Virus record (IMG/VR): IMGVR_UViG_3300009370_001221
Coordinates: 124,001 to 188,000 of that record
Reading direction: 5' to 3' (one strand)
DNA length: 64,000 bases
Made by a program: the position numbers and the translations under genes. The notes under the pieces are model-generated. The model had not been told where the DNA came from, ran no database searches, and was given only the letters and a program-made list of their open reading frames with translations. Of the stretch, positions 1 through 64,000 are shown piece after piece; the stretch's first letter is position 1, and every line of letters begins with the position of its first letter.

Positions 1-163
1 TTTCTTGAATTTCTGCTCTACGTGCTTTAGATAATTTGCCTAATTCACCGAGTGCTTTGCGAGCACGAGCGGCAGCTGCTTTAACACCTTTATCTTCGAA
101 TTTTGCTGATTCGCTCAAGTAACTATCTACTTGGTCTAAAATTTGTTGATGGATCGTTGCCAT
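1..163 (-). CDS. Histone H1-like (Hc1-type) small basic DNA-binding protein, 3' end runs off the window (not in ORF track)
   Basis: Reverse complement from ATG at 163 reads MATIHQQILDQVDSYLSESAKFEDKGVKAAAARARKALGELGKLSKARRAEIQE. The KGxKAAAxRARKAL motif is typical of Hc1-like proteins. GGAG RBS about 8 nt upstream. Confidence 0.75.
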   Translation of the reverse strand, partial: MATIHQQILDQVDSYLSESAKFEDKGVKAAAARARKALGELGKLSKARRAEIQE

Positions 164-189
164 TTTCTATACTCCTTTGGTATTTGTAT

Positions 190-1947
190 TTACATTATCT
201 GTACGTCATCACTGTAATTTGTGAATCCGTTCTCTTTTGTAACTGTCAAAACGCTATGTACTCGCCCTGCCAGTTCATCCTTATGGGATATTAGGAACAC
301 ACTTTTGTTTCTATCTCTACTAACTTTTTTAAGTATGCTGATACTACCTTCCAATCCCAAAGTATCCATTCCACTATCTACTAATTCATCTATAATTAAT
401 AAGTTTATATTATTATATAAATGTTCCCAAACGTCTCTAAATGCCCAACTTAAACTTAAAATAAGTCTATTGCGTTCGCCTCTACTTAAATTATCAAAGT
501 CTAAGTCACGGCCATACTCTGTAATTTCAACACTTAAATCATTTTGGAATTCTACAGTATGTGGTAATCCTATTCTATCTAAATAATAACTTAAACGTTT
601 ATTTAAGAATGCCAAGTTTTGATCTATTATACGTTTACGTATAAACGAATCCTTATTTACGAGCAAACGTAATAAAAATTCCTGATGTTCTCGCACTCTT
701 ACTATATCATTTAGTTTATCATAATTAACTTCTTGCAATACAGAATCTTGAAGATCTTCTATTTGACTGCTAAACGGATCAACTGCATCTATTTTAGTTG
801 CTAATTCCTTTTTTAAATACTCTAAACTTGAATCATGTTTATAAGCATCAGCAATCGTTTCATAAAATGTTTCTATTTCAGTATCTATATTATCTATCTC
901 ATCTATTTTTTTAATTATAGATTTTAAATTTTTCTTTTCCTTTTTTATTATGTCTTTATGTTCGTTTATCTGCGTGTTTATATCAGATAACATTTCTTGA
1001 TGCAATGCATCATGTAATGGTTGCCCACATGCATGACATTTTTTGTCTTCTGCTGATGCTAAATTAGTATTATAATTTTTCAGTTCTCTTTCATACTTTG
1101 TTAATGAACTCTCTGATGTTCTGCGTTCACGTTCATAACTGCGTAATTTGGATTCTATTTTTTCAATGTCTGCTTTTTTAGTATGTAATGCTAATTCATC
1201 CTCTATATTCACTGCTATTAATTTATCAATTGCTTTGTTTAGTTTATCTATTTCAGTATTTTTTGATTCTTCCCACGCTTTTTGTTTCAAACGCAAACTG
1301 TTTATTGTTGTCTCTATATTCTCATTTGCTTTTATTATACCTTTTATTGCGTATTCTTCTTCAGTTATTTTATCTTTAGTTACTTTTACTACTTCTCTTA
1401 AACTCTCTGCCTTTTCACTTAATAAAGTTATACCCAATAATTCCTCAATTACCTCACGTTGATCAGCAACACGCATCGCTAAAAATGGTTCAGTATATGT
1501 ATTAAGTGCTACAATATGTTTGAATATCGTATGCCCTAATCCTATATCACGCTCTATCTCTTCTTGTGTTTGCCTATTTTCACCTTGCGCCGAACTTTCT
1601 TCATCCTGCTTAAAATATTTTAATGTAGCAGGCCGTCTGCCGCGCTCTATACGATAGTCTTGACCATCCTTCTCATACTCAATAGTAACTAACATATTTT
1701 TACCGTTAGTTTTGTTTATGAGATTATCTTTTTTAATATTAGTTAATGCTGAACCATACAACACATAACTCAACGCATTAACAATAGTAGTCTTACCAGT
1801 ACCGTTACGAGCACCAGCATCATCGCCACCCAAGTCCAAATTCTCACCCAATACTAATGTAAGATCTTGTCTGTTTAAATCTACCGCTTGGGTTTGATTA
1901 CCCACGCTCATAAAATTTTTAACTGTTAGAGATTTTAATACTAACAC
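190..1947 (-). CDS. Recombination endonuclease ATPase subunit (T4 gp46 / SbcC / Rad50-like)
   Basis: Walker A (NGTGKTT), long coiled coil with CHAC zinc hook, ABC signature LSRGE, Walker B LLIIDE, H-loop LISH. Confidence 0.95.
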   Translation of the reverse strand: MLVLKSLTVKNFMSVGNQTQAVDLNRQDLTLVLGENLDLGGDDAGARNGTGKTTIVNALSYVLYGSALTNIKKDNLINKTNGKNMLVTIEYEKDGQDYRIERGRRPATLKYFKQDEESSAQGENRQTQEEIERDIGLGHTIFKHIVALNTYTEPFLAMRVADQREVIEELLGITLLSEKAESLREVVKVTKDKITEEEYAIKGIIKANENIETTINSLRLKQKAWEESKNTEIDKLNKAIDKLIAVNIEDELALHTKKADIEKIESKLRSYERERRTSESSLTKYERELKNYNTNLASAEDKKCHACGQPLHDALHQEMLSDINTQINEHKDIIKKEKKNLKSIIKKIDEIDNIDTEIETFYETIADAYKHDSSLEYLKKELATKIDAVDPFSSQIEDLQDSVLQEVNYDKLNDIVRVREHQEFLLRLLVNKDSFIRKRIIDQNLAFLNKRLSYYLDRIGLPHTVEFQNDLSVEITEYGRDLDFDNLSRGERNRLILSLSWAFRDVWEHLYNNINLLIIDELVDSGMDTLGLEGSISILKKVSRDRNKSVFLISHKDELAGRVHSVLTVTKENGFTNYSDDVQIM

Positions 1948-2972
1948 TAAATGCTCCTATATATGTCTAGTAGCATTTGTGGATCATAATGTTCACTCTC
2001 AATATTAGAAAGTTGGTCTATAACTATAGAGTCAATACTGTCAAAATTTAACTCTATGTCTTCATTCAATATATCTAAATCTAATTTCTCCTTGTCTGGC
2101 AATAAACTTAACTCACGCATTTTAAATTGTTCAGCAAATGTCTCTTTAACATAGTTTGCCTCTTCGTAAGTAATATCAATATCCATAGTAACCCTAGCAT
2201 AGGTTTTCTCAGTTAGATAATAACCCGGATCATCCAGTAATTGCGATAATTTTAATGTTTTATATGAAGGTGCATCAGGCCACGCAACAAACTCTGGCTC
2301 GCCATCCCACTCCAACATCATCATACCTCGCTCATCATCCCAAGCATCACTGTAGTTGTGGGGGAAACAATTGCCTACATATACAACATTCTTGCGTTGC
2401 TGTCTTTTATGAAAGTGGCCGCTAAAAACATAATCTGCTTTATGCATATCTTCAGCATGTAACTCATTAGTTTCAGGCATTTGTATCATTGCGTTCATAT
2501 AGAAATGTGGCAACTCGAAATGTCCAAAGATATATTTTGCTTTTACTTTCTTTAATTTTTTGTAATCATCACCCACGAGCCAAGGCACAATAGCACAATT
2601 TCCCGCATTAAACGGTTCATCTACTATTGTTATACCAGAGAATCTACTAGCAAACTCTACACTATTAAGATCACGCCTATCTCTGTAATATAAGTCGTGA
2701 TTGCCCGTGATAAAGTAAAAATTATCAAACGAACTGCCTAGTTTTTCCAAACTACGCAGGCTATAGTTCAGTGTGCTGACATTGATGCTGGCTCTATGAT
2801 GGTGCCAGTCTCCCAAAAATATGGCAGTTTCGCAATTGTTTTCTTGTGCGGTTGCTATGAACCAATCTACAAAATCTTCGCAATCTTTATTGTGTGTTAT
2901 TGAGTTACTTTTATTACCAAAGTGAATGTCTGTACATACTGCTATTTTATTGAATAAATTATCCGTACTCAT
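1947..2972 (-). CDS. Recombination endonuclease nuclease subunit (T4 gp47 / SbcD / Mre11-like)
   Basis: Metallophosphoesterase motifs DIH, GDWHH, GNHD, GHF, SGHFH. Coupled to the gp46-like gene. Confidence 0.93.
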   Translation of the reverse strand: MSTDNLFNKIAVCTDIHFGNKSNSITHNKDCEDFVDWFIATAQENNCETAIFLGDWHHHRASINVSTLNYSLRSLEKLGSSFDNFYFITGNHDLYYRDRRDLNSVEFASRFSGITIVDEPFNAGNCAIVPWLVGDDYKKLKKVKAKYIFGHFELPHFYMNAMIQMPETNELHAEDMHKADYVFSGHFHKRQQRKNVVYVGNCFPHNYSDAWDDERGMMMLEWDGEPEFVAWPDAPSYKTLKLSQLLDDPGYYLTEKTYARVTMDIDITYEEANYVKETFAEQFKMRELSLLPDKEKLDLDILNEDIELNFDSIDSIVIDQLSNIESEHYDPQMLLDIYRSI

Positions 2973-2979
2973 TTATATT

Positions 2980-13516: not shown

Positions 13517-16500
13517 ATGGCCATACGTAAAACTGTAAATTTATTACCACAACAGTTCCAAACTGATGTAAATAAGAAATTTTTAAATGCTACATTAGAT
13601 CAATTAATATCTCCAGGAACAATGGAGATGTTATCTGGGTTTGTTGGGCGACGAGATGTTGATAATTTTAAAAATACAGATAGTTATATTGTTGAAACAG
13701 ATAATGATAGATTAAATTATCAACTTGAACCAGCAGTTACTATTAAAAAGGAATTGTCTGAAACAAAATATGATTTTGCCTCAACATATATAGATATTGT
13801 TAATTCAATTAGTGCCGCTGGCGGTGATAATAATAATCATGATAAACTGTTTAGTAATGAATATACAGTATGGTCACCACCAATTGATTATGACAAGACT
13901 ATTAACTATACAAAATATTACTGGCTACAAACAGGTCCAGATAGATGTGATATCACTGATCCTATCACTATTAGTGATATTGTAGGAAAGAAAACTTATA
14001 CATATACTTCAGTAGATGGCAATAAAACATTAAAATTTTCAACAGGACTTAAAGTACGATTTACTGGCACCGTTACGCCATCAACATACGCAAATATTGA
14101 TTATATTGTTGCGGACGTAGGCACAAGTATTAGATTAATTCCGTTAAGCGAATTATACACACCAGAGTCTGCTGTATATACATTAAGCAAAGATTACTTA
14201 ACTATCAAACGCGGTGCGATTGATGGTAACCAATGGAGTAATAATAACCGTTGGTTCCATGAAGAAATTATTGGAGTAACAGCAACATACAATAAAGATA
14301 CTGCTATATATGATTCAGCATTGCGAGCAAAAAGACCAATATTAGAATTTGATAATGATCTCAAATTATATGATTATGGTACAAAATTATTAACAACTGT
14401 TGATTTAGTTGATACAACTTTTACAGATGCTTTTACACAACTAGAAGGCGAGCCTGGCGGTTATATTGATGGTGTTGCATTGACCGCCGGACAAAAAGTT
14501 GTATTTACTGCCGATACTGATCCATTAGTAAATGGTTATATATATGATGTGCAATTTGTAACTATTGGCGGCGTAAGTGTTATTCATTTAGAAAAAAATA
14601 CTACTGTAGCAGATCCTGCAACAGATAATACTATTATTGTTAATAGCGGTGCTGATAATAAAGGCACACAATGGTATTACAAAAATAGTAAGTGGTACAA
14701 GGGACAAGTAAAAACTGGATTGAACCAAGCACCGATATTTGACGTATTTGATAAAAACGGAAATAGTTTTTCAACATACGCAAGTAGCACATTTGCTGGA
14801 TCAAATATCTTTAGTTATGCTGTAAACAGTGCCGGTACTGCTGACACAGAATTAGGCTTTGCCCTAACATATAAAAACTTTACTAACATTGGCGACATTA
14901 TTTTTAATGATAACCTAATTAAGGATAGTTTTTCATATACATCTGATGCCACAGCGGGCACTACAACATCCGTAAGACTTGCTACAGGATTCTTACATAA
15001 AAATACGGCTCTAACCACATATTCCACACTTTCTAATTGGGAAAAGGCTCCATTTGAAAGTAGACAATTTATACAAAATACTATTGTTGTAGGGTCAGAA
15101 TTAAAGCAATTTAAGGTAACTACTATTCCTAAAACGGAAACAACAGCAAAGAATTTAATTGTTACAGTAAATGGTAAGTTAAAAGAAAAAGGCACTGGTA
15201 CAACAACAAAAGATTATTATGTTACTACAGATACTGGATTTCAATATGTTAATTTTACAAACAATTTAACTATTGGCGATATATTAGTTATTAAGGTACA
15301 TACAGACACAAGTATTGAAAAATTAACTACTGGAGAGTTTTATACAATACCAACTAATTTAAGCAACAATCCACTAAATGATATGACAACTACTACTAAT
15401 TTTACATTAGGACAAGTTAGAGATCATATCAGTAGTTGTATTGAAAATAGTTTAGACTTTTCCGGTGCTACGTTAGGTAGTAATAATATTCGAGACATTG
15501 GCGATATTGCTACACTTGGTACTAAAATTATACAAAATACTGGCAGTTTGCTCAAAGCAGGTTATATGTTAACTAATGGAACATATAATTTAATTGACTC
15601 AATAACTCATGCTTCGAATGAATATAATAGATTTAAAAATCAATTTTTAAATAAAGCAAAAACTATTGGAGACTTTACAAGCACTTCAGATAGATTAGAC
15701 AAAACACTACGAGCAATGGCAGCTGAAAAAAATAGCACAATGCCATATTTTGATAGTGATATGGTAGCATTTTCAACAGACATTACGACATTATCATATA
15801 CAGTATTTGATATTGACAATAAACAATTTGAACTTAATACAACATATAATGACACAATCCCTGGACAAACAGCGGTATTAGTTTATAAAAATGATGTAAT
15901 GTTGTTAAAAGATCAAGACTATACTTTTTCTACTACCACACCGTTTGTTACTTTAACAAGTAACATTACATTGGCAGAAAACGATGTTATTAAACTTGTT
16001 GAATACACTAATACTGGTGGTAACTTTATTCCACCAACACCAACTAAATTAGGATTGTATCCTAAATATGTTCCAAGCAAATATTCTGATGACACATACA
16101 CAACTACTATTGACGTAATACAGGGACATGATGGATCTATTACACCAGCATATAGTGATTATAGAGATGATTTATTATTAGAGTTAGAAAGACGAATTTA
16201 TAATAATATAAAAGCAGTATATAACTTTAAGCTAGTAGATATTAATAGTGTAATACCATCTCGTTTTAGAAAAACACAATACTCAACAGACACTGTAAAC
16301 AACATATTAGCCATAGAATTAGCACAATGGGCGAATAATAATAATGTTGATTATACTAAAAATAGTTATTATGTTTCTGGTTCTGATTGGACTTACAATT
16401 ATAAAAACATAAAAGATACCTTAAGTGATGCGGAATTTTTACCAGGTTATTGGAGAGCAATTTACAAATACTTTTATGATACTGATCGCCCACACACTCA

Positions 16501-19500
16501 TCCGTGGGAAATGCTTGGATTTAGCATTAAACCAAGTTGGTGGGAAACAACTTACGGCCCTGCTCCATACACTAAAGACAACTTGGTGCTGTGGACAGAT
16601 ATAGAAGCAGGTAAAATTGTAAGTGGTGATAGAGCAGGCACATATATTGAATATGCTCGTCCTGGATTGGTGGCTACTTTTATACCAACTGACGCGGCCG
16701 GCGATTTAAAATCACCAACAAGTATTGGTATAGTTGGACTTGTGACTGGAGAAATTCAAGGAAACTTTTCAGTTGGGCACCAAGGCCCTGTTGAAACAGC
16801 ATGGCGCCGAAGCAGTTATTATCCTTTTGCAATTCAAATATTACTAGCCTTAACAAAACCAGCAAAATATTGTGAATTTATGTTTGATACAAGTAAAATA
16901 ACCACTAACATGTTGGGGCATTATGTTGATAAAACGACTACTTTACCTATTAAACCAAATGTATCTAAGATACATTCATACATTAATACAGATTCAACAG
17001 TTGATTATACATTAGGTTATAACAATTGGGTAGTAGATTATTCAAAATATTTAGGTCTTAATACAACAACATTTTATAAACAATTAAATGCTTTGGGTAT
17101 TAATTTAGCATATAAGATGTCGGGGTTTGCTGATAAAGATAAATTAAAAATCATACTAGAACAAATATCTCCTTCTAAATCCACAACAGATATTTTTATA
17201 CCACAAGAAGATTACAATTTTCATTTAATGGAAAGTAGTCCTATCCAAAGTATCAATTATAGTGGCGTAATTATTACAAGAAGCACGGGTGGTTGGAAAA
17301 TAGATGGTTATAATAAAAAACAACCAACATTTAAAATTTTACCAAGTATTATTACTAGTAATAGACGACGAACTGTAAGTGTTGGAGGATATGCTCCTAA
17401 ATGCTCAGAATTAATCACTGGGCGATCTTACTCTGTTAATGAATATATTAAATCTGGTGATATCTATTATCAAGTTAAAACTGCGTTTATAGCAGGTGAC
17501 GGTGATGACTTGGCTAATCTTACTCGCATTGCCAAATTACCCACAATTGGTGGCGTGTCAGCAACTCAATATGATGACTATAGCACAACAGTTGCAACTA
17601 TACCATATGGTAAAGAATACACAACAGTTCAAGAAGTATATGACTTTTTAATTAGTTATGGAAGATATTTAGAAAGTGTTGGCTTTGTATTTGATAATGT
17701 AACAAATGGGTTTGACTATATTGAAGATTGGAAAAATACTGCAAAAGAATTTTTATTCTGGACTTTGCATAACTTTTCTATAGGATCAATGATTACGTGT
17801 AGTGCTGGAGCAAATACTATTAAATTGAATTTAGTATCAGCACAAATTGATACAATGTCAAATAATATGTTACCATCGAGTGTTATAGATCAAAATAGAG
17901 ATAGAATTTCAGTAAACAATTTATTTTATAGTAGAATAGACAATAATTTTCAACTATCCGTTAGTGATAATACTGACGGTATATACGCGGCTACATTTAA
18001 TCCTATACAAACAGAACATTTATTAATACTTGAAAATGAAACAGTGTTTAAGGATGTTATTTGGTCATTATTTACTGGTAGTAGACAAAATAGAATTAAA
18101 CTAGTTGGTTATAAAACTGAACTATGGGATGGTACACAACAGTTACCAGGTTATGTATTATTAGATGATACCGTTGATGATTGGGACATTAATAAAAGTT
18201 ATCCAATTGGAGAAATAGTAAAATTTAAAGATAAATTTTATGCTAGTAAATTTAATCATGACCCAAATGATTTAACAGAACTTGGAAAATTTGACTTTAG
18301 TAAATGGAAATTATTAGATCGGGTTAATGGTGGCTTATTAACTAACCTAGACTCTAAAGCAGACAACTTTAGAGGTTATTATGAAATTGAAGATGATGGA
18401 AGAATTATAGAAACTGATACATTGGCATCTAATTTGATAGGTTTTCAAAATAGAAAATATTTAGAAAATTTACAAATTGGTGATATAGCTCAAAAGAAAT
18501 TCTATCAAGGATTTATTAAAGAGAAAGGCACATCATCTATTACTAATAAATTATTAAGAGCAAAACTACCAGCAATAGATAGCACACTTAACTTATACGA
18601 AGAGTGGGCATTTAGAGTTGGTGAGTACGGTTCTGTAGCAAGTTCACAAGTAATTGAATTTAAACTAAAAGAAAATGAATTTACAGATAATCCAGAACTA
18701 ATTGAGATTATTAATACTGCTGAACAATATAAAAATACAAATATTACACATAGGCCAAGTGACTTATATCAAAAACCACTTGAACCAAGACAGTTTAACA
18801 AAAATGTATTTAAAAATTTAGCAGAGGATATTAGCACAAGAGATTATTTGCCTGATGCTGGTTACGCACGTTTAGATGACGTACAGCACAAAGTATTAAG
18901 TCTAGAAAATTGGGTACCTAACAATACGGTAGACATTACTGAAAATATCAATATTGATACACAACTAATAGGTAAAACTTCTTATACTTCAACAGAAGGT
19001 ATAATCACAACACTAACAAATGGTATGGTAGTTAAATTTACTGGAATTAATACTATTCCTACCTCATATAAAACTGGTACTTGGATAGTAACTGGTGTTG
19101 ATGAATCTATAAAACTTACTGAAAAAAGCGAGTATTTAAATTCTCTAAATGTAGGTGATAAAATGTGGGTTGCAAATTCTGCTACATATCCACCAACATA
19201 CGCAGAAAATTCAAATGACTGGAATGTATATAGAATAACAAGTACTAAAAATAATCCTATATCTATAACAGGAGATACGATTGCAAATACTATTAAAGTA
19301 ACATTTAAAAATCCTGTAGATTCTATATTAGTAAATGAGATTATAATTTTACGAAGATTTGTTGATAGTACTATCCCTGCAATAGACTGGAGCGGGGTTT
19401 ACAAAGTTAAAACTAATTTTACTAGCGATGGACTCAATGTATTAGAATTATATGCCGATTTGGATCTATCTGCATCATTTGAAACTTTATCTTTAAATGA

Positions 19501-22500
19501 AACTAGTACACGTGGTGAATTTTTAAAGCTAGAAAGTGCTAGGTATGCAACTACTTCGGCACTAGTTAATAGAACAGAACCAACGCACGGGTGGGAAGAT
19601 GGTGATTATGCTTGGATTGATAATCATAATAGCACTAACAAATGGGCAGTACTTGAAAAGAAAGATCCTTATACATTAGGAAAAGAATTATATCCTAACG
19701 GTAAAGCAACCAATACAGGATTTGGACAAGGCGTTGCAGGCAATAAAGACTTGTCAACAATATTAGTTGGGTCAGTATATGATACAACATCAGCAGGTAG
19801 CATTGAGCAATGGACACGTGATGTTGCTACAGTGTTTGATGTTAAAAGTATATTTGTAAGTGATATCACTTCAAAGACAGCAGGCACATTAAATACTTCA
19901 GGTTACTTACTAACAGTAGAAAGTGATGGTTTACCACACCCAGCACCATTTGGAACATTTCCTACAACAGACGGAAAGAATCCAAATAGAGTTGTAACAC
20001 GCAACTATAAACATACATTTAAAACTCGTGTAGGAACAAATACTACAGCGGCACCACAAGTAGCAGTACCACTCGGTGGTATTGGCATAATGGCTAACGG
20101 TGTTGTAATAGCAAGTCCTTCAGCAACAGCAACATTACCAAACGACAATGGTCCAGCCAAGGGCGTTGCCCCAACAGGATTTGAATGGAACGCTGTAGAG
20201 AACGCAACGGCAGTTGGTATGGATGCATCACATGGGCATCCACAAGAAGATAATCAGTACCATTACCACAGCGGCAAATTTTTAAGCCAATGGGATTACC
20301 ATGTATATCAAGCAAATACATATTATCAAGGCACCAATTATAGTGGTGATCACTGGAGGCACACTGACGGTCATTCCAAAATCCTAGGCTATGCATATGA
20401 TGGTTATCCAATCTATGGCCCATTCGGCTACCAAACTGCCACTGATTCAACAACCACGCCACTGCGTATGACATCAGCATACCAAAAACACACAGATCCA
20501 GTATCTGGACGTGGTTATACATACACAGAATACCCTGCAGGTACATTTATAAATGACTATCAGTTTAATTCTGCTGTAGGAACATTAGACAAGCACAATG
20601 GTCGTTACTGTGTAACGCCAGATTATCCTGATGGAACTTATGCTTACTTCTTAACAATTACTAGTGCTGGCGTTCCAGTATATCCTTACATTATTGGACC
20701 AACATTTAAAGAGATACCAACATTAGAAACAGACACAGTGCCAGTAGATCCAGGTGGTAGTAATGCACAAACAATTGCATTAACGCCTGGAGAGTTCACA
20801 TATAGCAATACTGTTGTGGATGGTAGTAAATTAAAGAATAGTGGTTGGGCAGGCTGGCAATTTGATATGGCAGTTGACGATGACTATGTAGTAACAAGTG
20901 CGCCAAATAGTAATAGCGGACAAGGTTATGCTATTGTGCTTAAAAAGAAAACAGACAAAACATATGAACCATTTGACATTATGCGTTCACCAAGTCCCAC
21001 AACAAATGGGTATTTTGGTTATGATATTGCTGTAAGTAAAAGCGGCACGTATGTATTAGTAGGAGCTCCAGGTGAACTAAAAGCATATATGTATAAATTA
21101 GGAACAGGTGTTACAGCAAGTAATGAATACTTCAATGGCGATGGTTCAACTAATGTTTTTACTTTCTCTTCAACATCATTTAGTAATAGTAATGAACTAA
21201 CTGTAATTGTAGATGGCCAAATTAAAATTGAAACATTAGACTATACATTAAGTGCTACACAAATTACATTTGTAGCCGCTTCAATACCACCAAGTGGTAC
21301 TAATAATATCCATGTAAGAAAAGGAAATTATTATAGTGCAATCAAAACATTTACTGGCGCATCAGGTACAGACTTTGGCCGTAGTGTTGCATTAAGTGAC
21401 GATGGTACTATTGCATTTATTGGTCAACCAAACAAAGCAGATGGTACAGCATTATCTGCAGGTGCAACTGAAGTTTGGAGTAAAACACCAACAGACACAT
21501 ATTTTAAAATACAAGATATTAAAAGTAATATATCTAGTACTAATGAAAATTTTGGTAAGGAAGTAGAATGTGGTGTAGATGGTCATATAGTTGCTATTGG
21601 TTCACCAGGCACTGACTTTCTAGTAATAAAAGAAATAACTACGGATGCTATCAACGCCGGCCAAGTTGAATGCTGGATCGACAATACAAAACATACTGGT
21701 ACAATAACTGGCACAGTTGCTAATCCAACTGTAAGCATTGGTGATAAACTTGTTATTAATGATCAAGAAGTAACATTTACTGGTACAGCACTATCTAATG
21801 TAGTAAGTGATATTACTGCTAAAGCAATACCACATATAACAGCATCCGCAACAAGTGATAACAAGTTAAAAATTGTTAGCACAAAAACAGATGCTAACGC
21901 AAAACTTACAATACGTGCAGGCACAACAAACGGCGGGACAGTGTTTACAGCATTAGGCTTAACACTATACACATATAAATCAGCATTGCGCCATCCAGAT
22001 GGTCCGCAAAATGCTTTTTATGGTGAGCATATTAAATTTAATAATACTGCGACAATGATTACAATTGGATCACCTTCAAGCTCAAGTGAATTTGAATTAA
22101 CGTTAGATGGTAACTTGACAAAATTTGACCAGCAAAACACTATAATCACTGACGTTCAACCTGATTCTGGTTCTGCTTTAATATATGATATTAATACTGA
22201 CTTAACATATTCATTAATACAGCGAGTAGATTGGGCAAACCGTAAAAAGAATGACAAATTTGGTACAGGCCTTGCAATGATTGGTAATACAGCATTAATT
22301 GGTGCTCCTGGTGATGATTATTTTGTGGAGGAACTAAAAACTGCTGACGGTGTGGCAACTGCGTATGCTATAACAGGGCAATTTACTACTGATAATTTAG
22401 AAATTAGTATGAATGGTCGAACAATGTTACAAGCAGAATTTAGTAGTGACAACGCATCACCAAATAGTACTGTTACATTTACAACAGCACCAGTTGCAAC

Positions 22501-25500
22501 ATCAGCAATAGTGTTTAAAAAATACACACAAAATACTGGTTCTGTATTAGAAGCAACTAATACAAATAATAAAGTTGCATGGAATAGTAAACGCACTCAA
22601 TCCGATAAAATTGATATTGGTGCTATTAATAAAGTCATTACGTATGATAAATCAACTAATAAATTTATCGATTATATTGACTATCATGATCCAATTAAAG
22701 GCAAAATACCAGGCGTTGCTGATGAAGAAATTAGTTTTAAAACAATTTATGATCCAGCAGTATACAATGTTACTTTTAATGCAACAGTAGTTAATGACTT
22801 AAAAAATCATTGGGGTCCTAATGAAGTTGGGGTACTATGGTGGGATTTAACTAATACAAAATATATTGAGTATGAACAAGGTGAACTAGAGTATAAACGT
22901 CTTAACTGGGGCAAATTGTTCCCTGGTACACAAATTAATATATATGAGTGGATAGAGAGTGACTCATTACCCTCAACATATGTATCATTAGGAGGTGACG
23001 GCACTCCAAAATTTGCTGATGATTCAGCATATGTAGAGTATCAAAAGTATAATACATCTACAAATACGTTGGAGCCAATTTATTACTATTGGGTTAAAAA
23101 CAAAACATCTGTGCCAGAAGTTTCCAACGCATATTTGGACGCTAATGGACAAATTAAATTTGCGGCGCATGGTAAGGAACTTGAGTTAAAGAGTTTTATA
23201 CCAGCCGCTACGAGAAAATTGCCAGCAAAAACTGTCGCAACAATACTAACAAATCCTACTGCATATGGATTAAAATACATTGGTATTGCCGCACAGAATG
23301 CATTTATTGGATATAATCTACAAACAGGACTAACTGGTGAGAATATTATTTTAAGTATTGAATATGATACTGTTAAAAATGATATACCGTTACATACAGA
23401 ATGGCAACTAGTACAAAAGAATAATCCACTATCAAAACCAAACAATTATTTAATTACTAAACTAGGTGATAGTTTAGCAGGAAAAGATGTAAGTGAAAAT
23501 CTTGTACCAGATACAAACGTACATGTTGGATCACGGTATGGTATAATGGAATACCCACGTCAAAGTATGTTTATTGATAGATTGGGTGCTATTAAAGTAT
23601 TAGTAAACTTCTGTAATTCTGTATTTACTAAACACAGAATGGCATTAGATTATAGTTTAATAAAAATTTCATCAGCAGATAAAGCACCAACATATGGATA
23701 TGGTGAAACTGTAGCAACATATACTGAACTAACTTATATTAATACAAATACAATTACAGATGGTTATAAAGTAATTGTTGCAAGTGATGAAACAAGAGGC
23801 AATTATTGGGTAACATATCAATGGAGTGTTAGTGATAATAGATGGAATTTAGAGAAAAAACAAAAATATGATACAACAAAATATTGGGATTATATTGACT
23901 GGTATGCTACTGGTTATGACTCTAATACTATTATTGATTATACGGTCGCAACAGAAAATGACCGCGCAAAATTAGACACTAAACTTAACGATGTTGTTAA
24001 AGTATTAAATGATGGACAAAGCAAATGGATATTATATAAAAATACTAGTGCCTCAACTACTGATGTATACGATATAATTGGTCAAGAAAATGCTACAATT
24101 AAATTTAAAACAACATTATATACAACAACTACGCCGTTGGCAGAGTTGCGTTATATTATTGATGCATTAAACACACAATTATTTGTCAGTGACTTAGAAG
24201 TTGAATTTAATAAATTATGGTTTGAATTAATACATTTTATCTTGTATGATCAAAACTTACAAGTAGACTGGGCATTTAAAACTAGTTTTGTAACAATCAA
24301 TCAAACTGTACGTAAACTATCTGAATTAGTAAATTATAGTTATGATGTGCAAGATAGTGTTAGAGATTTTATTAATGAAGCAAAACCATACAGAACAAAT
24401 ATTAGAGAATATGTATACCGTTATGATTACACTGAATTACCACAAATAGGAAATACTGATTTTGATTTGCCAGGCTACTATGATACAACAGACAAATTAT
24501 TTAGATCACCTAATGTATATGAAGCAGACGACGATGCTCGTATGCTTACAGCACCTTGGGTTGATTGGAAAAATCATTATACAAAGAAAGTAGTTAGTGT
24601 TAATGTTTTAACTGCCGGCAGTGGTTATGCAACTACTGCAACATCAACATATGATGCAGTTGGTTATGATATTACTGGATATGATCACAGTGCAACTACA
24701 GCATCTCCACCAATAGTTACTATTTCAAGTGGCGCACAATGGAAATTAGGTTATACTTATGATGAAACCAAAATACCTGGCGCCGCAGGCGCACAGGCAG
24801 TTCTTGTAGTACCAGAACACAGTCCAGATACATTATGGTACTATAGTGGTACAGAACAAGGCACAACTCAATGGAAAGATATGGGTTGGAAAGTTACAAT
24901 AAAACCTAAATTAGCAACTAATGAAAGTAAAACGTTTGCTGTAACTGTAGTATTGGATGGCACAGGCAAACCAGATTTTTATATAGATGGCACAGAACGA
25001 CCTAACCTTATTTTGTACAGGGGGTCAACATACACATTCACACAAACAGACGTAAGCAATCTAGGTTACGGGTTCTTTAGGTTCTCGGCAATAGAAGATG
25101 GCACACATAGAGATGGCTCTGGCGCAACTGCTGTTCCTGTAATGAAAACACCTGGTTTAGCAAGTGTTGATTCTATTACAGTAACCAACGGTGGTACAGG
25201 TTATGTAACCACTCCAATAGTAACTATATCAGGCGGTAGTGGTAGTGGTGCAACTGGTTATGCTAATTTAGAAAACTATAAAGTAAGAGACCTTAAAGAA
25301 ACAATTAAATTTGATCGTGTTGATGCACCATCACATGTTAAAACAATTGCCGTAACTGCTGGAGGCAGTGGATATACCTCAGCACCTACGGTAACAATAA
25401 CAAATGCCTCAGGAGATACAACAGGCGTTGGTGCAAGTGCCAAAGCGGTTATTACCGGTGGAGCAGTAACAGCGGTTATTGTAGAACAAGAAGGCACAGG

Positions 25501-39005: not shown

Positions 39006-39022
39006 TACGCTAAAGTGGGCGG

Positions 39023-46011: not shown

Positions 46012-46022
46012 AGGAAGGTGAC

Positions 46023-46238
46023 ATGAAGAAAGATATACATCCAAAGTATGAAGTAATAAAAGTAAAGTGCCATTGTGGCAATGAATTCGAAACCAGGTCC
46101 ACCTTATGTAAAGATTTATACGTGGAAGTATGCTCTAATTGTCACCCTTTCTATACAGGTGGAGCAGGCAAAGTAAAAGTTGAGGGACGAGTAAGTAAGT
46201 TCCAAGAAAAGTATGGAAGAAAGGACATAAAAAAATGA
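46023..46238 (+). CDS. rpmE: 50S ribosomal protein bL31 (Zn-ribbon, type A)
   Basis: MKKDIHPKY...CHCG...[12 protein letters not shown]...[20 protein letters not shown]. Confidence 0.95.
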
Positions 46239-48900: not shown

Positions 48901-49864
48901 ATTAGTAATATCAGGTGGTGATAGTTTTACCTTTGGCAGTGAGTTGTCAGATATTGATGAAACTGGAAAGACGCTTGTCCAGCTAATGCCAAGTAAATTT
49001 TCCTGGGCAGATCTAGTAGCACAAAAATTAAAAGCAATACATATTAATACTGCTTGGCCTAGTCGAAGTAATAGTTTTATTACTAGGCATATCATACACG
49101 AAGTATCTAAAGCATTACACTACAATCAGAACATTAATTCCGGAATACTCGGACGGCCAGGCCGAATTCGTCCGTATAGACCTAATGAAATATTCGTTCA
49201 AGTAATGTGGACATATCTTGGAAGACACGAAGTTCTTGTTAATAATTTACTTCACGAGTATGATCGAGGAGGCAAAGCAGGCAAGCCTGGAACTGGTCCA
49301 ATATATTATGATAGACCGGATTCTCCATGGTTTAATGTAGATCCACATAGTGCTTTAGATGATGTTGATAATAAACTTATAGGGTTTGCAAATTATATAG
49401 AAGAGTATTATAAAGTTACTGGAGAGTTAACTGATCATTATATATCTCTTAAAGAAATTTTATTTTTACAAGAATTTTTAGAGAATAGAAACATTAAATA
49501 TATGTTTACGTATGTACACTCTGAGGTTATAGATCAACTTACTGGTATAGATGTAAAAAATGAATATACAACAGATTTAGATACACCTATAGATATTATT
49601 GATGAACTGCGTAGAGAAATAAAATTTGATGAGTGGTTTAGTTTTTCTTCTTGGGAAATGTTTGATAGAAAATCGTATGGTGGATTTAAACGCCCAGAAA
49701 AAGATTATATTGGTTTTTGGAATTGGGCAGCCGGATCACAACGCACAAGTCCAACAAAGAAGAGGAAAAAATATAAATTTGGTCCTGGAGGCCACCCATT
49801 AGAACAAGCACATATAGATGCGGCGGAGATAATATATGATCACATTAGTAATCTCTGGGGGTGA
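48890..49864 (+). CDS. SGNH/GDSL-like hydrolase or acyltransferase (#1)
   Basis: SGGDSFTFGSEL block I, SRSN block II, C-terminal GHPLEQAH. Confidence 0.65.
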   Translation: MSVKLVISGGDSFTFGSELSDIDETGKTLVQLMPSKFSWADLVAQKLKAIHINTAWPSRSNSFITRHIIHEVSKALHYNQNINSGILGRPGRIRPYRPNEIFVQVMWTYLGRHEVLVNNLLHEYDRGGKAGKPGTGPIYYDRPDSPWFNVDPHSALDDVDNKLIGFANYIEEYYKVTGELTDHYISLKEILFLQEFLENRNIKYMFTYVHSEVIDQLTGIDVKNEYTTDLDTPIDIIDELRREIKFDEWFSFSSWEMFDRKSYGGFKRPEKDYIGFWNWAAGSQRTSPTKKRKKYKFGPGGHPLEQAHIDAAEIIYDHISNLWG

Positions 49865-51721: not shown

Positions 51722-53288
51722 TGCGGCAATTAGTTTAATAGATGACGGTGAAATATTGTTCGCTGGACACGCAGAACGTTATAGCAAAGTAAAACACGAT
51801 AAAGAATTAAACAGCAAGTTACTTAACAACGCATTAGATTATGGTTACCCCGATTTTGTCTCATACTATGAAAATCCGTGGCTTAAGAAAACTAGACAGT
51901 TGTATTCCGGGCAATGGAAAGACTTGTTTACAGAGTTTAGCATTAAAAAGAAAATAGCATACAACACAGGGTTTAGATGGAACAAAACTAGTTTTAATTA
52001 TCATAATCATCACCACAGCCACGCCGCCGCAGGCTTCCAAACAAGTCCTTTTAATGATGCCACTGTAGTAGTAATAGATGCTATTGGAGAATGGGATTGT
52101 ATTACGTTATGGAATGCATATTATGATGGTAATGGCCAAGCCTGCTATGAAAGAATTTGGGGAGCAAAGTATCCTAATAGTGTAGGACTGTTTTACAGTG
52201 CGATGACGCAAAAAGTTGGCTTGCGGCCGTTAGATGAAGAGTATATTTTAATGGGTATGGCAGCATATGGAGAGCCAATTTATAATAGAGAAATACTAGA
52301 TAAGTTTTGGAAAATTGGCGGTCCGAAAATACTTCGTGCAAGAGAAAACTTACATTTAGGCACTGATTGGCACAGTGGCCCGCCATGGACGTCACAAGAT
52401 GACGATATGGTAGAACAAGACCAATACGATATAGCCGCTTCTGCTCAAGTTGCACTAGAACAAGTTGTAACATACATAATGAATTTTGCACGGCGTATTG
52501 GCAAGTCTCCTAATTTAGTTTACATGGGAGGTGTTGCGTTAAATTGCGTTTGTAATACTAATATTTCCCGCATTTGGGAGGATGTTTGGATTATGCCCAA
52601 TCCTGGTGATGCTGGCAGTAGTTTAGGCGCGGCCGCCCTAACATATGGTAAGAAACTAAACTGGCGAGGGCCGTTCCTGGGGTATGATATAAAAGGTGAA
52701 TACCCAGATGGAGAAATTATAAAAGAATTAATGTCCTCACGTCAAATTGTGGGCGTTGCCAACGGTAGAGCGGAGTTTGGTCCAAGGGCACTAGGCAATA
52801 GGACATTGTTTGCTGATCCACGCGGGCCAGACATTAAAGATAAAGTAAATGAGATAAAGCGTCGGCAAAAGTTTAGGCCGTTTGCTCCAATGATACTCGA
52901 AGAGAGATCAGAAGAGTACTTTGAAATGCCACTAGTAACTACACCAGCACATCCTTCTACACGCCCTTCTTTTTCCGTACATAAGTCAGGTCAACCGCAT
53001 CATTTTACAATGACACACATTCCAAGTCCGTTTATGCAGTATGTAGGACGGTGTAGACAGCCAGATAAGTTTCCGGCGATTGTACATAAGGATGGCACAA
53101 GCAGAGTGCAGACGGTAGGGCCAAATGATAATCCTAATGTACGTAAATTGCTTAAGATGTGGGAATATTATACAGGTTGTCCAATGTTGTTAAATACTAG
53201 TTTAAACATTAGAGGCGAGCCAATGGTAAATGACATTGAAGACGCCAAGCGTTTTACTGAACTATATGGTGTAAAAGTATGCACATAA
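51687..53288 (+). CDS. Carbamoyltransferase (NodU/CmcH/TobZ family)
   Basis: ILGVSCGFHDAA, HHHSHAAA, VIDAIGE, MGMAAYG, GGVALNC, PGDAGSSLGAA, EFGPRALGNR, FRPFAP, HKDGTSRVQTV, LLNTSLN. Confidence 0.93.
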   Translation: MKILGVSCGFHDAAISLIDDGEILFAGHAERYSKVKHDKELNSKLLNNALDYGYPDFVSYYENPWLKKTRQLYSGQWKDLFTEFSIKKKIAYNTGFRWNKTSFNYHNHHHSHAAAGFQTSPFNDATVVVIDAIGEWDCITLWNAYYDGNGQACYERIWGAKYPNSVGLFYSAMTQKVGLRPLDEEYILMGMAAYGEPIYNREILDKFWKIGGPKILRARENLHLGTDWHSGPPWTSQDDDMVEQDQYDIAASAQVALEQVVTYIMNFARRIGKSPNLVYMGGVALNCVCNTNISRIWEDVWIMPNPGDAGSSLGAAALTYGKKLNWRGPFLGYDIKGEYPDGEIIKELMSSRQIVGVANGRAEFGPRALGNRTLFADPRGPDIKDKVNEIKRRQKFRPFAPMILEERSEEYFEMPLVTTPAHPSTRPSFSVHKSGQPHHFTMTHIPSPFMQYVGRCRQPDKFPAIVHKDGTSRVQTVGPNDNPNVRKLLKMWEYYTGCPMLLNTSLNIRGEPMVNDIEDAKRFTELYGVKVCT

Positions 53289-62941: not shown

Positions 62942-63261
62942 AAATTTTTCAATGTTTCGTCTGTGGTTGATTGAATATCCGTTGATATTTTTCCGATGTT
63001 TAAAATATAATCAACGGAGACTATTTCATCTTCAAATTCTTCCATTCGTTCTTCTAAAGCAATTTCTAAATCTTCTGGTGGAATGCCTTGTTGTAATAAT
63101 TCTACTACACTAACAATAATTTCTTGTTTACCTATAGTATGTACTACTAAATGGTCAATATATTCCACAGGTATGTTGGTTATATCAACCCCCTCTATTA
63201 TTGTCTCCCACCTATTTAAAAATGCTCTAGTTAAACAAATACTATCATTAGGCTGTGGCAC
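62938..63261 (-). CDS. Hypothetical acidic protein
   Basis: 107-aa ORF coupled to thyX (ATGA overlap). Confidence 0.6.
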   Translation of the reverse strand: MPQPNDSICLTRAFLNRWETIIEGVDITNIPVEYIDHLVVHTIGKQEIIVSVVELLQQGIPPEDLEIALEERMEEFEDEIVSVDYILNIGKISTDIQSTTDETLKNL

Positions 63262-63817
63262 GAGCCTTAGTCTTCTTTTTAGTTGTTGCTTTCTTTTTGA
63301 CTGTTTTTGGCATCAACTCATCTGCCTCTTCTCTTAACCTCGCCGCTTCTGATTCCATCATTGCAGCTTGATTATTAAGACTTTCAGCAATTTGTGCATC
63401 ACTCATTACACTTCCATCTTCTGTTTGACTTTGCTGTGCAACTACGGCGGGACTGCCAGTATCACTACTTACTTCATTTGCTCTAATTGCATCATTTACT
63501 TGATTTAATGGAACTGCATTCTGTGAATCAGGCGTTAGTGCTACATCGTTTGTTGGAAGTTTCATTATTTTGCGAGTAGAATGTAATGTTTCCAAAATAG
63601 GACGTCCTTCTTTATTCATATGGTGATGTAGCACATCAGCCAATTGATTGGATTGTTGCCCTTCAAGGCCCTCTAATACTGCCATTAAAGAGTCGTGTTC
63701 TGTCTCTGGTAACGATCTTGTCTTTACCACTAAACAATTATCTGGCTCGCCGGGAACTTCCCTGAAAAGTACTACTACTTTGTCGCTTGTTGATATTTGC
63801 TTGCCAACGTGTTTCAT
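63248..63817 (-). CDS. Hypothetical protein
   Basis: 189-aa ORF with AGGAG RBS. Confidence 0.7.
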   Translation of the reverse strand: MKHVGKQISTSDKVVVLFREVPGEPDNCLVVKTRSLPETEHDSLMAVLEGLEGQQSNQLADVLHHHMNKEGRPILETLHSTRKIMKLPTNDVALTPDSQNAVPLNQVNDAIRANEVSSDTGSPAVVAQQSQTEDGSVMSDAQIAESLNNQAAMMESEAARLREEADELMPKTVKKKATTKKKTKARATA

Positions 63818-63826
63818 ATATTTCTC

Positions 63827-64000
63827 CTATTCCTCATCTGCAGGTGGTTCAATCTCTGCTGTTGGTGTATCATCATCTTCAGCTGGTGTATCTGGTGCTG
63901 GAACATGATGTTGTAAAAATGCTATTAATCTATCATAAGTCATACCAACTGCCGATAGTTCAGCGGCATTGAAAGCACCCCTACGGGAACTTACTTCAAT
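63827..64000 (-). CDS. Hypothetical protein, 3' part only (not in ORF track)
   Basis: Open frame from the window end: IEVSSRRGAFNAAELSAVGMTYDRLIAFL...acidic tail, TAG at 63829-63827. Confidence 0.6.
   Translation of the reverse strand: MEVSSRRGAFNAAELSAVGMTYDRLIAFLQHHVPAPDTPAEDDDTPTAEIEPPADEE

What the first reader, a model, noticed from the sequence alone, without database searches (positions are those of the whole stretch)
1..64000. Apparent avoidance of GCWGC revealed by Ala-Ala codon pairs
Seen: single Ala codons are mostly GCA/GCT, but in Ala-Ala pairs the first codon is usually GCC/GCG. Examples: 6830 gcggcc, 8700 gccgct, 25608 gcggccgct, 29443 gcggccgca, 47139 gccgccgct...gcggccgca, 52022 gccgccgca, 52627 gcggccgcc. 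My by-eye tally is roughly 45-50 GCS-GC against about 15 GCW-GC, the opposite of what an AT-rich genome predicts. Known: GCWGC is a restriction-modification target (TseI/ApeKI; GCAGC for BbvI). Inference: long-term selection by a host defence recognising GCWGC, which is a host-prediction clue. It may also mean that any phage DNA modification does not protect this site.
Basis: partly seen in the sequence, partly recalled or inferred. Interest (0 to 1): 0.6.

Follow-up and report, generated by a model that had tools for sequence, protein, structure and literature searches.

The report
Jumbo phage avoids GCAGCV and AGCT

Summary
In called genes of the window, 15 Ala-Ala pairs start with GCW and 69 with GCS, although 83% of other Ala codons are GCW (Fisher p = 5e-35). 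Under codon-shuffled nulls, GCWGC is 15 observed against 61-75 expected in the window. In the whole 235-kb contig it is 86 against 272-318 (z about -21 to -25), the most depleted 5-mer.

The avoided word is asymmetric, not GCWGC. Of 89 GCAGC sites, 78 are followed by T. GCAGCA and GCAGCG are at O/E 0.01-0.03, GCAGCC at about 0.1-0.2, and GCAGCT carries no GCAGC penalty. AGCT is a second, independently avoided word (O/E 0.27-0.33).

Depletion holds on both strands, in all frames and in every 20-kb bin. It persists in relatives whose four-fold sites differ by 29%, and is absent from other marine phages tested the same way.

Best reading: selection by host sequence-specific nucleases, one with a six-base asymmetric target (Type III/IIG/IIS/BREX style) and one AluI-like. 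TseI, ApeKI and BbvI all cut GCAGCT, so they do not fit unaided. The host could not be identified. This is a known kind of signal, with a more precise motif.

The parts
1..64000 (.). Whole window: depletion of GCAGCV (3 sites in genes against 44-53 expected) and of AGCT (39 against 131-167), with compensating excess of GCSGC (91 against 35-49). GCNGC as a whole is unchanged (106 against 109).
   Evidence: 200 codon shuffles, nulls A and B
52260..52265 (+). The only surviving GCAGCA in the window. It lies inside the carbamoyltransferase-like ORF 51687-53288.
   Evidence: ORF family
49727..49732 (+). Surviving GCAGCC, the weakly tolerated C flank.
34538..34543 (-). Surviving GCAGCC on the minus strand (GGCTGC on plus).
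72..79 (.). GCAGCTGC, an example of the tolerated T-flanked form, counted on both strands. Other GCAGCTGC at 26600-26607 and 49977-49984. Single GCAGCT sites start at 4968, 15719, 30482, 54230 and 63363 on plus; on minus the GCTGC cores start at 6153, 12741 and 30722.
   Evidence: site list
25610..25618 (+). Other examples at 6831, 8701, 29445, 47140, 52023 and 52629.
13517..28069 (+). 4850-aa ORF (YHYH, FG-GAP and T7 tail-fibre N-terminal domains). At 14.5 kb it is the largest single ORF in the window. It holds three GCWGC sites (15719, and 26600/26603 in one GCAGCTGC), all of the GCAGCT form.

Best explanation
The window lies in an uncultured marine jumbo myovirus: a 235-kb IMG/VR contig, about 67% complete, distantly related to Rak2/GAP32/121Q-type phages. 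Its lineage has been under long-term purifying selection against two short DNA words, removed mostly through synonymous codon choice.

Word 1 is the asymmetric hexamer GCAGCR, extended more weakly to GCAGCC (written GCAGCV). GCAGCT is not a target. Word 2 is the palindrome AGCT.

The most likely agents are sequence-specific nucleases of the hosts' defence systems. An AluI-like Type IIP enzyme would account for AGCT. For GCAGCV the agent would be a system with a six-base asymmetric site, as is typical of Type III, Type IIG/IIS or BREX-like systems.

Shown here: the depletion, its exact sequence limits, its DNA-level symmetry, its persistence and its lineage specificity. Inferred: that the agent is host restriction, and which enzyme class it belongs to.

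The Ala-Ala codon-pair reversal follows directly. GCA-GCA, GCA-GCG, GCA-GCC and Y/G-preceded GCT-GCN are forbidden spellings. Ala-Ala is therefore written GCS-GCN or, at the cost of one AGCT, GCA-GCT.
For: (1) Size of the effect. GCWGC is 86 against 318/272 in the contig. GCAGCV is 11 against 221/189. GCAGCA is 2 against 138/122.

(2) Flank rule. The base after GCAGC is T 78, C 8, A 2, G 1. O/E under null B is A 0.02, G 0.03, C 0.22, T 0.91 in G000, the same in G001, and A 0.05, G 0.18, C 0.92, T 0.63 in G007. All 32 AGCAGC occur as AGCAGCT, so the rule is asymmetric rather than a symmetric flank preference.

(3) Conditional model. Synonymous swaps that never create GCAGCV, combined with one uniform AGCT weight, reproduce the data. 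G000: GCAGCT 80±6 (observed 75), AGCT 172 (176), GCSGC 354 (364). G001, G007, G011 and G013 fit likewise.

(4) DNA-level effect. Depletion appears in sense and antisense and in all three frames (5/99, 1/11, 0/8 and 1/3, 0/5, 4/61). It also appears in non-coding DNA (3 GCWGC against 9 GCSGC).

(5) Uniformity. GCAGCV O/E is 0-0.15 in every 20-kb bin.

(6) Maintenance. G001 (323 kb; 194 orthologues, 82.7% aa identity; 29% of four-fold sites differ) shows 17 against 310/258. None of the few GCAGCV sites at conserved Ala-Ala pairs is shared between the two genomes, while GCAGCT sites turn over freely. Twenty-three further fragments agree.

(7) Lineage specificity with the same pipeline. G008, G009, G010, G012 and G016 avoid AGCT but hold GCWGC at 0.9-1.1; G014 is milder, at 0.67.

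(8) AGCT and GCWGC are the two most depleted of all 4-, 5- and 6-base palindromes. TGCA, TGCGCA (0 sites), GTGCAC, CTGCAG and CTWAG are also low, which fits hosts rich in restriction systems.
Against: No host and no cognate enzyme were found, and avoidance alone cannot name the agent. In the literature library searched here, the word GCAGCR turned up only as a DREME-derived m4C methylation motif in Clostridioides difficile, and no restriction enzyme of that specificity was found; REBASE itself was not available. The C flank is graded (about 0.1 in G000, 0.3 in G007, about 1 in G011 and G013). That needs either several related enzymes or a leaky position. A phage-encoded shield (the SPPY methylase) acting on GCAGCY would give the same counts. 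Gene calls were made by a simple longest-ORF rule.
Confidence: 0.65

Rival explanations
1. The host enzyme is a plain GCWGC or GCAGC cutter (TseI/ApeKI/BbvI type). The T-flanked subset, and partly the C-flanked one, is shielded by a methyl group placed by the phage's own divergent SPPY methyltransferase acting on GCAGCY. Only unshielded sites were purged.
For: One conserved methylase-like gene exists just outside the window (G000 189961-191226, minus strand; 421 aa). It has motif I DSSCGWGD and motif IV TSPPYF, and a sub-threshold to threshold PF01555 match (24.1 bits in G000, 26.8 in G001). It has 917 metagenomic homologues, many tagged PF01555, and 26-30% identity to annotated N4-cytosine or DNA methylases of Vibrio and Staphylococcus phages. 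Tolerance of the C flank differs between G000/G001 and G007, whose methylases are only 67% identical.
Against: Foldseek finds only generic class I SAM methyltransferases such as Trm11 and CmoB, with no DNA methylase on top, so even the substrate is unproven. Five other phage lineages carry 38-40% homologues and show no GCWGC avoidance or shielding pattern (a sixth, G014, only a mild dip to 0.67). The shield would have to block the GCWGC enzyme yet leave AGCT restriction untouched, because GCAGCT bears the full AGCT penalty. A six-base asymmetric methylase is no simpler an assumption than a six-base asymmetric nuclease.
Confidence: 0.15
2. Mutual cross-protection. Two host systems (AGCT and GCWGC) each methylate the cytosine that the two words share in GCAGCT. 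The overlap would then be safe from both, and would be exempt from both avoidances.
For: Under plain codon-shuffle nulls, GCAGCT looks exempt (O/E 0.77-0.98) while the 15 other NNAGCT flanks are at 0.08-0.39. The shared cytosine makes cross-protection chemically possible: M.BatI methylates the first C of GCWGC.
Against: The exemption from AGCT avoidance is an artefact of the null. Allowed Ala-Ala spellings are inflated about 3.5-fold (292 against 83). Conditional on no GCAGCV, neutral GCAGCT would be about 190 against 75 observed. A uniform AGCT penalty predicts 80±6. GCAGCT is therefore penalised like any other AGCT.
Confidence: 0.03
3. The phage avoids the target words of a nuclease of its own, for example one that degrades host DNA or a homing or nicking enzyme, rather than those of host enzymes.
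For: Self-avoidance would give the same strand-symmetric, genome-wide depletion, conserved within the clade. The contig is only 67% complete, so a gene could have been missed.
Against: No such nuclease was identified. AGCT avoidance is shared by ten of twelve unrelated marine phage contigs examined, which points to something common in the hosts. Several further classical restriction palindromes are also depleted.
Confidence: 0.08
4. Context-dependent mutation, for example deamination of methylated cytosines in these words, rather than selection.
For: Methylated words can decay by mutation. This was not tested directly.
Against: O/E of 0.01-0.03 is far beyond known mutational depletion. Depletion depends on the base after the word (T against A or G), is equal on both strands, and is absent in phages of similar G+C. 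GCNGC as a whole is conserved, so codons were re-spelled rather than lost.
Confidence: 0.05
5. Translational codon-pair bias at Ala-Ala.
For: The signal was first seen as a codon-pair effect.
Against: The same word is depleted on the antisense strand (4 against 61), in the two other reading frames, and in non-coding DNA. GCA-GCT is used freely while GCA-GCA is not (42 against 1).
Confidence: 0.02

Closest known systems
Restriction-site avoidance in phage genomes. From my own knowledge, not checked here: Sharp 1986; Gelfand and Koonin 1997; Rocha, Danchin and Viari 2001; Rusinov et al. 2018.
   Same: Short words are depleted against composition- and codon-preserving nulls, on both strands, and specifically to one lineage. 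Several classical palindromes (AGCT, TGCA, CTGCAG, GTGCAC, TGCGCA) are low together.
   Different: The strongest non-palindromic word is an asymmetric six-mer with a degenerate last base, purged to O/E 0.01-0.05. No host or enzyme is known, and the phage is an uncultured marine jumbo virus.
TseI / ApeKI (GCWGC) and BbvI (GCAGC) restriction enzymes. Specificities are from my own knowledge of REBASE/NEB.
   Same: They share the five-base core GCAGC/GCTGC.
   Different: These enzymes do not read the sixth base, so they would cut GCAGCT. Here GCAGCT is tolerated at 75-78 sites while GCAGCR is almost absent.
Type III and BREX-type targets: asymmetric 4-6-base words. Examples are GCAG of H. pylori HP0593 and CGCAG of M.FpsJII. 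From my own knowledge: CAGCAG of EcoP15I, and T7's escape from it by site orientation.
   Same: An asymmetric word of five to six bases containing GCAG, with a degenerate position.
   Different: No orientation bias was seen among survivors (GCAGCC 4+/4-, 8+/9-, 13+/16-). The word is removed outright rather than kept in one orientation. The enzyme class was not tested.
GCWGC-type methylases: M.AbaBS3I (m4C, Chloroflexi CL500-11), M.BatI (GCDGC, Bacillus anthracis prophage) and M.Cdi1226 (Clostridioides difficile).
   Same: They show that GCWGC-centred modification systems occur in plankton and in prophages.
   Different: These are methylases with palindromic or GCDGC specificity. None has the 3' V rule, and none is linked to this phage.
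AluI-type AGCT systems and AGCT m4C methylation in marine and lake Thaumarchaeota. Also the GMAGCTKC m4C motif in Ca. Methylopumilus.
   Same: AGCT is a modified word in abundant plankton. AGCT is avoided by this phage and by nine of the eleven other phage contigs tested.
   Different: Methylation was reported without proof of a cognate nuclease. The phage has bacterial-type features: SD-like sites, T4-like late promoters and Rak2-like structural genes.

Membership tests
Restriction-site avoidance (phage counter-defence by loss of target words) | The word is depleted relative to a null that keeps protein sequence and codon usage. | tested here: met
   GCWGC 86 against 318/272. GCAGCV 11 against 221/189. 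AGCT 176 against 650/528. Window alone: 15 against 75/61.
Restriction-site avoidance (phage counter-defence by loss of target words) | The effect acts on DNA, not on translation: both strands, all frames and non-coding DNA. | tested here: met
Restriction-site avoidance (phage counter-defence by loss of target words) | Maintained by selection in diverged relatives and absent in unrelated phages of similar composition. | tested here: met
   G001, G007 and the fragments share it. Four-fold sites are 29% diverged and GCAGCV sites are never shared. G008-G010, G012 and G016 lack it; G014 shows only a mild dip (0.67).
Restriction-site avoidance (phage counter-defence by loss of target words) | A host enzyme with the matching specificity exists. 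| not testable with these tools
   The host is unknown. The only lead is a 5-kb contig binned in a Vicingus MAG. That genome has 1720 GCAGCA, and none of 87 genomes of its order avoids the word. The absence of self-avoidance neither proves nor excludes a host.
Target of a TseI/ApeKI-type enzyme (palindrome GCWGC) | Every GCWGC is a target whatever its flanks, and any flank effect is symmetric. | tested here: not met
   78 of 89 sites are GCAGCT. AGCAGC occurs only as AGCAGCT. O/E is T 0.91 against A 0.02.
Target of a BbvI-type enzyme (GCAGC, Type IIS) | The five-base word suffices for recognition. | tested here: not met
   Same data. The sixth base decides the outcome. A model that forbids only GCAGCV fits the counts.
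Target of a Type III / IIG / BREX-like system (asymmetric 5-6-base word) | An asymmetric word of 5-6 bases, often with one degenerate position. | tested here: met
   GCAGCR/GCAGCV.
Target of a Type III / IIG / BREX-like system (asymmetric 5-6-base word) | A cognate adenine methylation on one strand and a matching Mod/Res or PglX gene in the host. | not testable with these tools
   No host genome or methylome is available.
Phage-encoded DNA methyltransferase (N6A/N4C, PF01555) | SAM-binding motif I and catalytic (D/N/S)PP(Y/F) motif IV in a Rossmann fold. | tested here: met
   DSSCGWGD and TSPPYF are invariant in 37 homologues. The model has pLDDT 90.
Phage-encoded DNA methyltransferase (N6A/N4C, PF01555) | A match to the family over Pfam's threshold, and a structural match to DNA methylases. 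| tested here: inconclusive
   24.1 bits in G000 (cut-off 26.7) and 26.8 bits in G001. A direct Pfam scan was blank. Foldseek's top hits are tRNA and small-molecule methyltransferases.

The most novel reading that the evidence does not exclude
The clade divides the work between two escape routes. Its divergent SPPY methyltransferase, from a large family known only from metagenomes, would methylate GCAGCY and so shield those sites from a GCWGC-type host enzyme. Every site it cannot shield (GCAGCR) has been purged by synonymous change. The flank rule would then read out the specificity of an uncharacterised phage methylase directly from the genome sequence.
Probability: 0.12. Interest if true: 0.6.

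Novelty: new member of a known kind. Interest (0 to 1): 0.4.

Why it matters
Restriction-word avoidance is textbook biology, so the finding is not new in kind. Three points give it some value.

First, the exact word is now defined: GCAGCR, with a weaker effect at C and none at T. It is purged to 1-5% of expectation across a clade of uncultured marine jumbo phages. That gives a concrete motif to look for in marine metagenome methylomes, which is one of the few ways to link such phages to hosts.

Second, AGCT avoidance in ten of the twelve marine phage contigs examined (eleven of them chosen for carrying the SPPY methylase family, so not a random sample) suggests that an AluI-like barrier is common among plankton with 31-38% G+C.

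Third, there is a methodological caution. Plain codon-shuffle nulls made the overlap word GCAGCT look exempt from AGCT avoidance.

Tried and rejected
1. Mutual exemption (XOR) of GCAGCT through overlapping methylation. I pursued this through. I rejected it when conditional MCMC nulls showed that GCAGCT carries the normal AGCT penalty.

2. A GMAGCT exemption in G011, which recalled the Methylopumilus GMAGCTKC m4C motif. The GCAGCT part is explained by competition among spellings. The GAAGCT part (18 against 22) rests on one 62-kb contig and remains unexplained.

3. Host identification.
- blastn against cultured phages found nothing.
- tblastn found only 35% relatives, with Proteobacterial hosts.
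- The genome-collection scan found one 5-kb contig in a Vicingus MAG. That MAG and 86 genomes of its order do not avoid GCAGCA.
- SD-like sites precede about a third of the crudely called starts. This is not diagnostic.
- The sequencing runs that hold the stretch are marine or seawater metagenomes only.

4. Methylase characterisation.
- The PDB sequence search was blank, and NCBIfam was blank.
- Pfam was blank on direct scan, and PHROGs was weak.
- Foldseek gave only generic methyltransferases.
- Cluster names were all 'hypothetical protein'.

5. No C5-methylase, D12 Dam or phage Dam family is present in G000 or G001.

6. Literature. A search for the degenerate words (GCAGCR and five variants) returned only a DREME-derived m4C motif in C. 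difficile; it found no restriction enzyme with the GCAGCR/V specificity. No supplement was held for the marine methylome paper.

Full report
WHAT THE WINDOW IS

The window is bases 124001-188000 of a single 235,363-bp IMG/VR viral contig. The contig is linear, has a CheckV completeness of 67% and is 35.8% G+C.

Its genes are those of a T4-like or Rak2-like jumbo myovirus. They include an SbcC-like gp46 nuclease subunit and a baseplate wedge protein that is 34-38% identical to those of GAP32, 121Q, Atu_ph07, Phosso and SCTP-2. There is also a 4850-aa protein with YHYH, FG-GAP and T7 tail-fibre domains. No cultured phage is close at the DNA level. Runs that hold the sequence are marine or seawater metagenomes from several studies.

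CHECK OF THE OBSERVATION

The window has 17 GCWGC against 92 GCSGC. The contig has 89 against 373.

In called ORFs, Ala codons are 82-84% GCA/GCT unless the next codon is also Ala. In that case only 18% (window, 15 against 69) or 22% (contig, 84 against 292) are GCW. Fisher p is 5e-35 for the window and 1e-128 for the contig.

- Null A permutes synonymous codons within each gene.
- Null B permutes third bases only among codons that share amino acid, first two bases and following base. It therefore also keeps dinucleotides.

GCWGC in the window is 15 against 74.7 (A) or 60.7 (B), with z of -12.7 and -9.9. In the contig it is 86 against 318 or 272, with z of -24.7 and -21.1. That makes it the most depleted of all 5-mers. 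GATC, GGCC, CCWGG and GANTC stay at 0.9-1.1. GCNGC as a whole is unchanged (450 against 465), so the excess of GCSGC is compensation.

THE WORD IS NOT GCWGC

Of the 89 GCAGC sites, read on whichever strand carries GCAGC, 78 are followed by T, 8 by C, 2 by A and 1 by G.

The Ala-Ala table shows the same rule (observed against expected):
- GCA-GCA: 1 against 98
- GCA-GCG: 0 against 18
- GCA-GCC: 4 against 24
- GCA-GCT: 42 against 52

Under null B the O/E values are GCAGCA 0.02, GCAGCG 0.03, GCAGCC 0.22 and GCAGCT 0.91. The 5' side has no effect. All 32 AGCAGC occur as AGCAGCT. The rule is therefore asymmetric, not the symmetric flank effect a palindrome-reading dimer would show.

AGCT is a second avoided word. 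It is the most depleted 4-mer, at 176 against 650/528. Among all palindromes of 4, 5 and 6 bases, AGCT, GCWGC and TGCA rank first to third. TGCGCA (0 sites in both genomes), GTGCAC, CTGCAG and CTWAG are also low.

A FALSE LEAD AND ITS CORRECTION

Under nulls A and B, GCAGCT (O/E 0.77-0.98) stood out from the 15 other NNAGCT classes (0.08-0.39). This looked like mutual exemption of the overlap word. I explored cross-protection by overlapping methylation, using comparison phages and the literature.

The effect is an artefact. An Ala-Ala pair must be spelled somehow. With most GCW-GCN spellings forbidden, the allowed ones are inflated about 3.5-fold (292 against 83).

I built a conditional null to test this.
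- Forbidding GCAGCR alone puts the neutral expectation for GCAGCT at about 177. Forbidding GCAGCV puts it at about 191. The observed count is 75.
- Forbidding GCAGCV and applying one uniform AGCT weight of 0.10 predicts GCAGCT 80±6 (observed 75), AGCT 172 (176) and GCSGC 354 (364).
- For G001, a weight of 0.15 predicts 124 (110), 312 (322) and 478 (525).
- G007, G011 and G013 are fitted equally well when GCAGCR is forbidden.

GCAGCT therefore pays the ordinary AGCT price and none of the GCAGC price. The two avoidances are independent.

On the conditional scale the C flank stands at about 0.11 in G000 (8 against 71) and 0.34 in G007 (28 against 82). It is about 1 in G011 and G013.

NATURE OF THE EFFECT

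GCAGCV is depleted on the sense strand in frames 0, 1 and 2 (5/99, 1/11, 0/8) and on the antisense strand (1/3, 0/5, 4/61). In non-coding DNA there are 3 GCWGC against 9 GCSGC. This rules out codon-pair or translational causes.

GCAGCV depletion is uniform, at O/E 0-0.15 in each 20-kb bin. AGCT depletion is graded. It is 0.02-0.14 at contig positions 1-20 kb and 180-235 kb, and 0.52 at 100-120 kb, where the large structural genes lie.

RELATIVES

IMG/VR holds a clade of relatives.

G001 is 322,647 bp and 90% complete. It shares 194 reciprocal orthologues at a mean 82.7% aa identity, and 29% of four-fold sites differ. It shows the same picture: GCWGC 127 against 447/371, GCAGCV 17 against 310/258, GCAGCT 110 against 137/112, and AGCT 322 against 914/756.

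At 214 conserved Ala-Ala pairs, only 95 hexamers are identical between the two genomes. GCAGCT sites are gained and lost freely. The four GCAGCV sites of each genome are never shared. The depletion is therefore maintained, not merely inherited.

G007 is 179 kb, with a baseplate protein 72% identical. It avoids GCAGCR and AGCT but tolerates GCAGCC more. Twenty-three fragments agree.

CONTROLS FROM OTHER PHAGES

I fetched nine other marine phage contigs, chosen only because they encode a homologue of the methylase-like gene described below. They have 31-41% G+C.
- Six (G008, G009, G010, G012, G014, G016) avoid AGCT strongly (0.06-0.33). Five of them hold GCWGC at 0.9-1.1 and G014 at 0.67. All six avoid GCAGCT like any other AGCT.
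- G011 and G013 show a milder GCAGCR deficit.

The pipeline therefore does not manufacture the signal. GCAGCV avoidance is specific to certain lineages, while AGCT avoidance is widespread.

PHAGE MODIFICATION GENES

G000 and G001 have no C5-methylase, D12 Dam or phage Dam family.

One conserved 421-aa protein lies about 2 kb beyond the window's right end (G000 189961-191226, minus strand). It has motif I DSSCGWGD and motif IV TSPPYF. Its PF01555 match is marginal (24.1 and 26.8 bits against a cut-off of 26.7).

It has 917 metagenomic homologues and distant kin annotated as N4-cytosine or DNA methylases in Vibrio and Staphylococcus phages. A confident model (pLDDT 90) matches only generic class I methyltransferases. 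It is a candidate DNA methylase of unknown specificity.

Whatever it does, it does not protect GCAGCR or AGCT. It could in principle shield GCAGCY, and I keep that as the main rival.

INTERPRETATION

The data fit long-term selection by sequence-specific nucleases of the hosts. An AluI-like enzyme would explain AGCT. A system reading the asymmetric hexamer GCAGCR, with leaky recognition of C at the last position in the hosts of G000 and G001, would explain the other word.

Asymmetric words of five or six bases with a degenerate position are typical of Type III, Type IIG/IIS and BREX systems. Related words such as GCAG and CGCAG are reported for Type III methylases.

They fit only if a shield is added.

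Survivor sites show no orientation bias. The phage therefore did not take the T7-type orientation escape from a Type III enzyme.

HOST CLUE

The only taxonomic lead is a 5.1-kb contig, 85% identical at the baseplate protein, binned in a MAG labelled uncultured Vicingus sp. (Bacteroidota). That genome has 1720 GCAGCA. None of 87 genomes of its order is poor in the word.

Self-avoidance is not required of a host, so this neither supports nor excludes it.

GCWGC-type methylation is reported in Chloroflexi, Bacillus prophages and Clostridioides. AGCT methylation is reported in Thaumarchaeota and, in extended form, in Ca. Methylopumilus. By itself the motif has little power to name a host. Matched to a methylome it could.

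VERDICT

This is a clear, well-delimited example of a known phenomenon in an uncultured marine jumbo phage clade. Novelty: new member of a known kind. Interest: 0.4.

Noticed in passing
window 35306-43667 and 54690-55871, with 44941-46966 and 51687-53288: An unusual concentration of at least five, perhaps eight, radical-SAM or SPASM enzyme genes: Pfam matches Radical_SAM and/or SPASM in six ORFs and PHROGs adds one more, though every Radical_SAM score lies just under Pfam's 29.5-bit cut-off and only the SPASM matches clear theirs. They sit beside a glutamine-synthetase-like gene, a SAICAR synthetase (PurC) and a NodU/Nol-type carbamoyltransferase. The product of this cluster is unknown. It could make a modified peptide, sugar or nucleotide.
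   Followed up: partly
window 59041-63817 (minus strand) and G000 189239-189964: Nucleotide-sugar genes: a GFO/IDH/MocA oxidoreductase, a DegT-type aminotransferase, an NAD-dependent epimerase/dehydratase, and a phosphomannomutase-like gene just outside the window. They resemble the glycan-modification cassettes of large marine phages.
   Followed up: partly
G000 whole contig; 20-kb bins: AGCT avoidance is graded along the genome. It is nearly absolute in the small-gene regions at 1-20 kb and 180-235 kb (O/E 0.02-0.14; 1 site against 47 expected at 200-220 kb). It is weakest at 100-120 kb, among large structural genes (0.52). GCAGCV avoidance is flat. The cause is unknown; candidates are timing of exposure on entry, expression constraints and gene age.
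   Followed up: partly
G000 whole contig; window 3845 (minus strand): TATAAATA occurs 17 times, 14 of them within 60 nt upstream of a gene start on the same strand. This is the T4-type late promoter word. TAAATA/TATTTA is correspondingly depleted inside genes (183 against 335-382).
   Followed up: partly
window and G000/G001 genome-wide: Further depleted words remain unexplained or not assigned to an enzyme. AGCCC/GGGCT is at O/E 0.2-0.4, with all four hexamer extensions examined (AAGCCC, CAGCCC, AGCCCC, AGCCCT) absent from the window. AGCGC/GCGCT is at 0.35-0.5 and CTWAG at 0.56-0.73. TGCGCA has 0 sites in both genomes. GTGCAC is at 0.1-0.2, CTGCAG at 0.3 and TGCA at 0.65-0.7.
   Followed up: partly
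G008-G016 (IMG/VR contigs behind loci L064, L066, L068, L073, L075, L092, L102, L122, L052): Ten of the twelve marine phage contigs examined avoid AGCT strongly. Individual ones also avoid GATC (G008, 0.24-0.46), CTGCAG (G008, G010, G012, G016: 0-0.12) or GGCC (G014, G015: 0.12-0.24). Each has its own restriction-word fingerprint.
   Followed up: partly
G011 (L146-L149): GAAGCT is not depleted (18 against 21.6) although AGCT overall is at 0.35-0.44. This recalls the m4C motif GMAGCTKC reported for Ca. Methylopumilus, a genome with no recognisable methylase gene (PMC6329791). It rests on a single 62-kb contig.
   Followed up: no
G006 and 86 genomes of its order: The tool's control pattern ACGACG is nearly absent (0-10 copies in about 3 Mb) from many of these genomes, while others hold 100-400 copies. 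That is a sharp lineage-specific avoidance of a CG-containing word.
   Followed up: no
L042 (CAYRAD010000222.1): A 5.1-kb contig encoding a baseplate wedge protein 85% identical to the window's is binned in a MAG labelled uncultured Vicingus sp. It is either a binning artefact or a hint of a Bacteroidota host.
   Followed up: partly
window 13517-28069 (+): A single 4850-aa ORF with a YHYH domain, FG-GAP repeats and a T7 tail-fibre N-terminal domain. It is presumably a giant fibre or baseplate-attached protein.
   Followed up: partly
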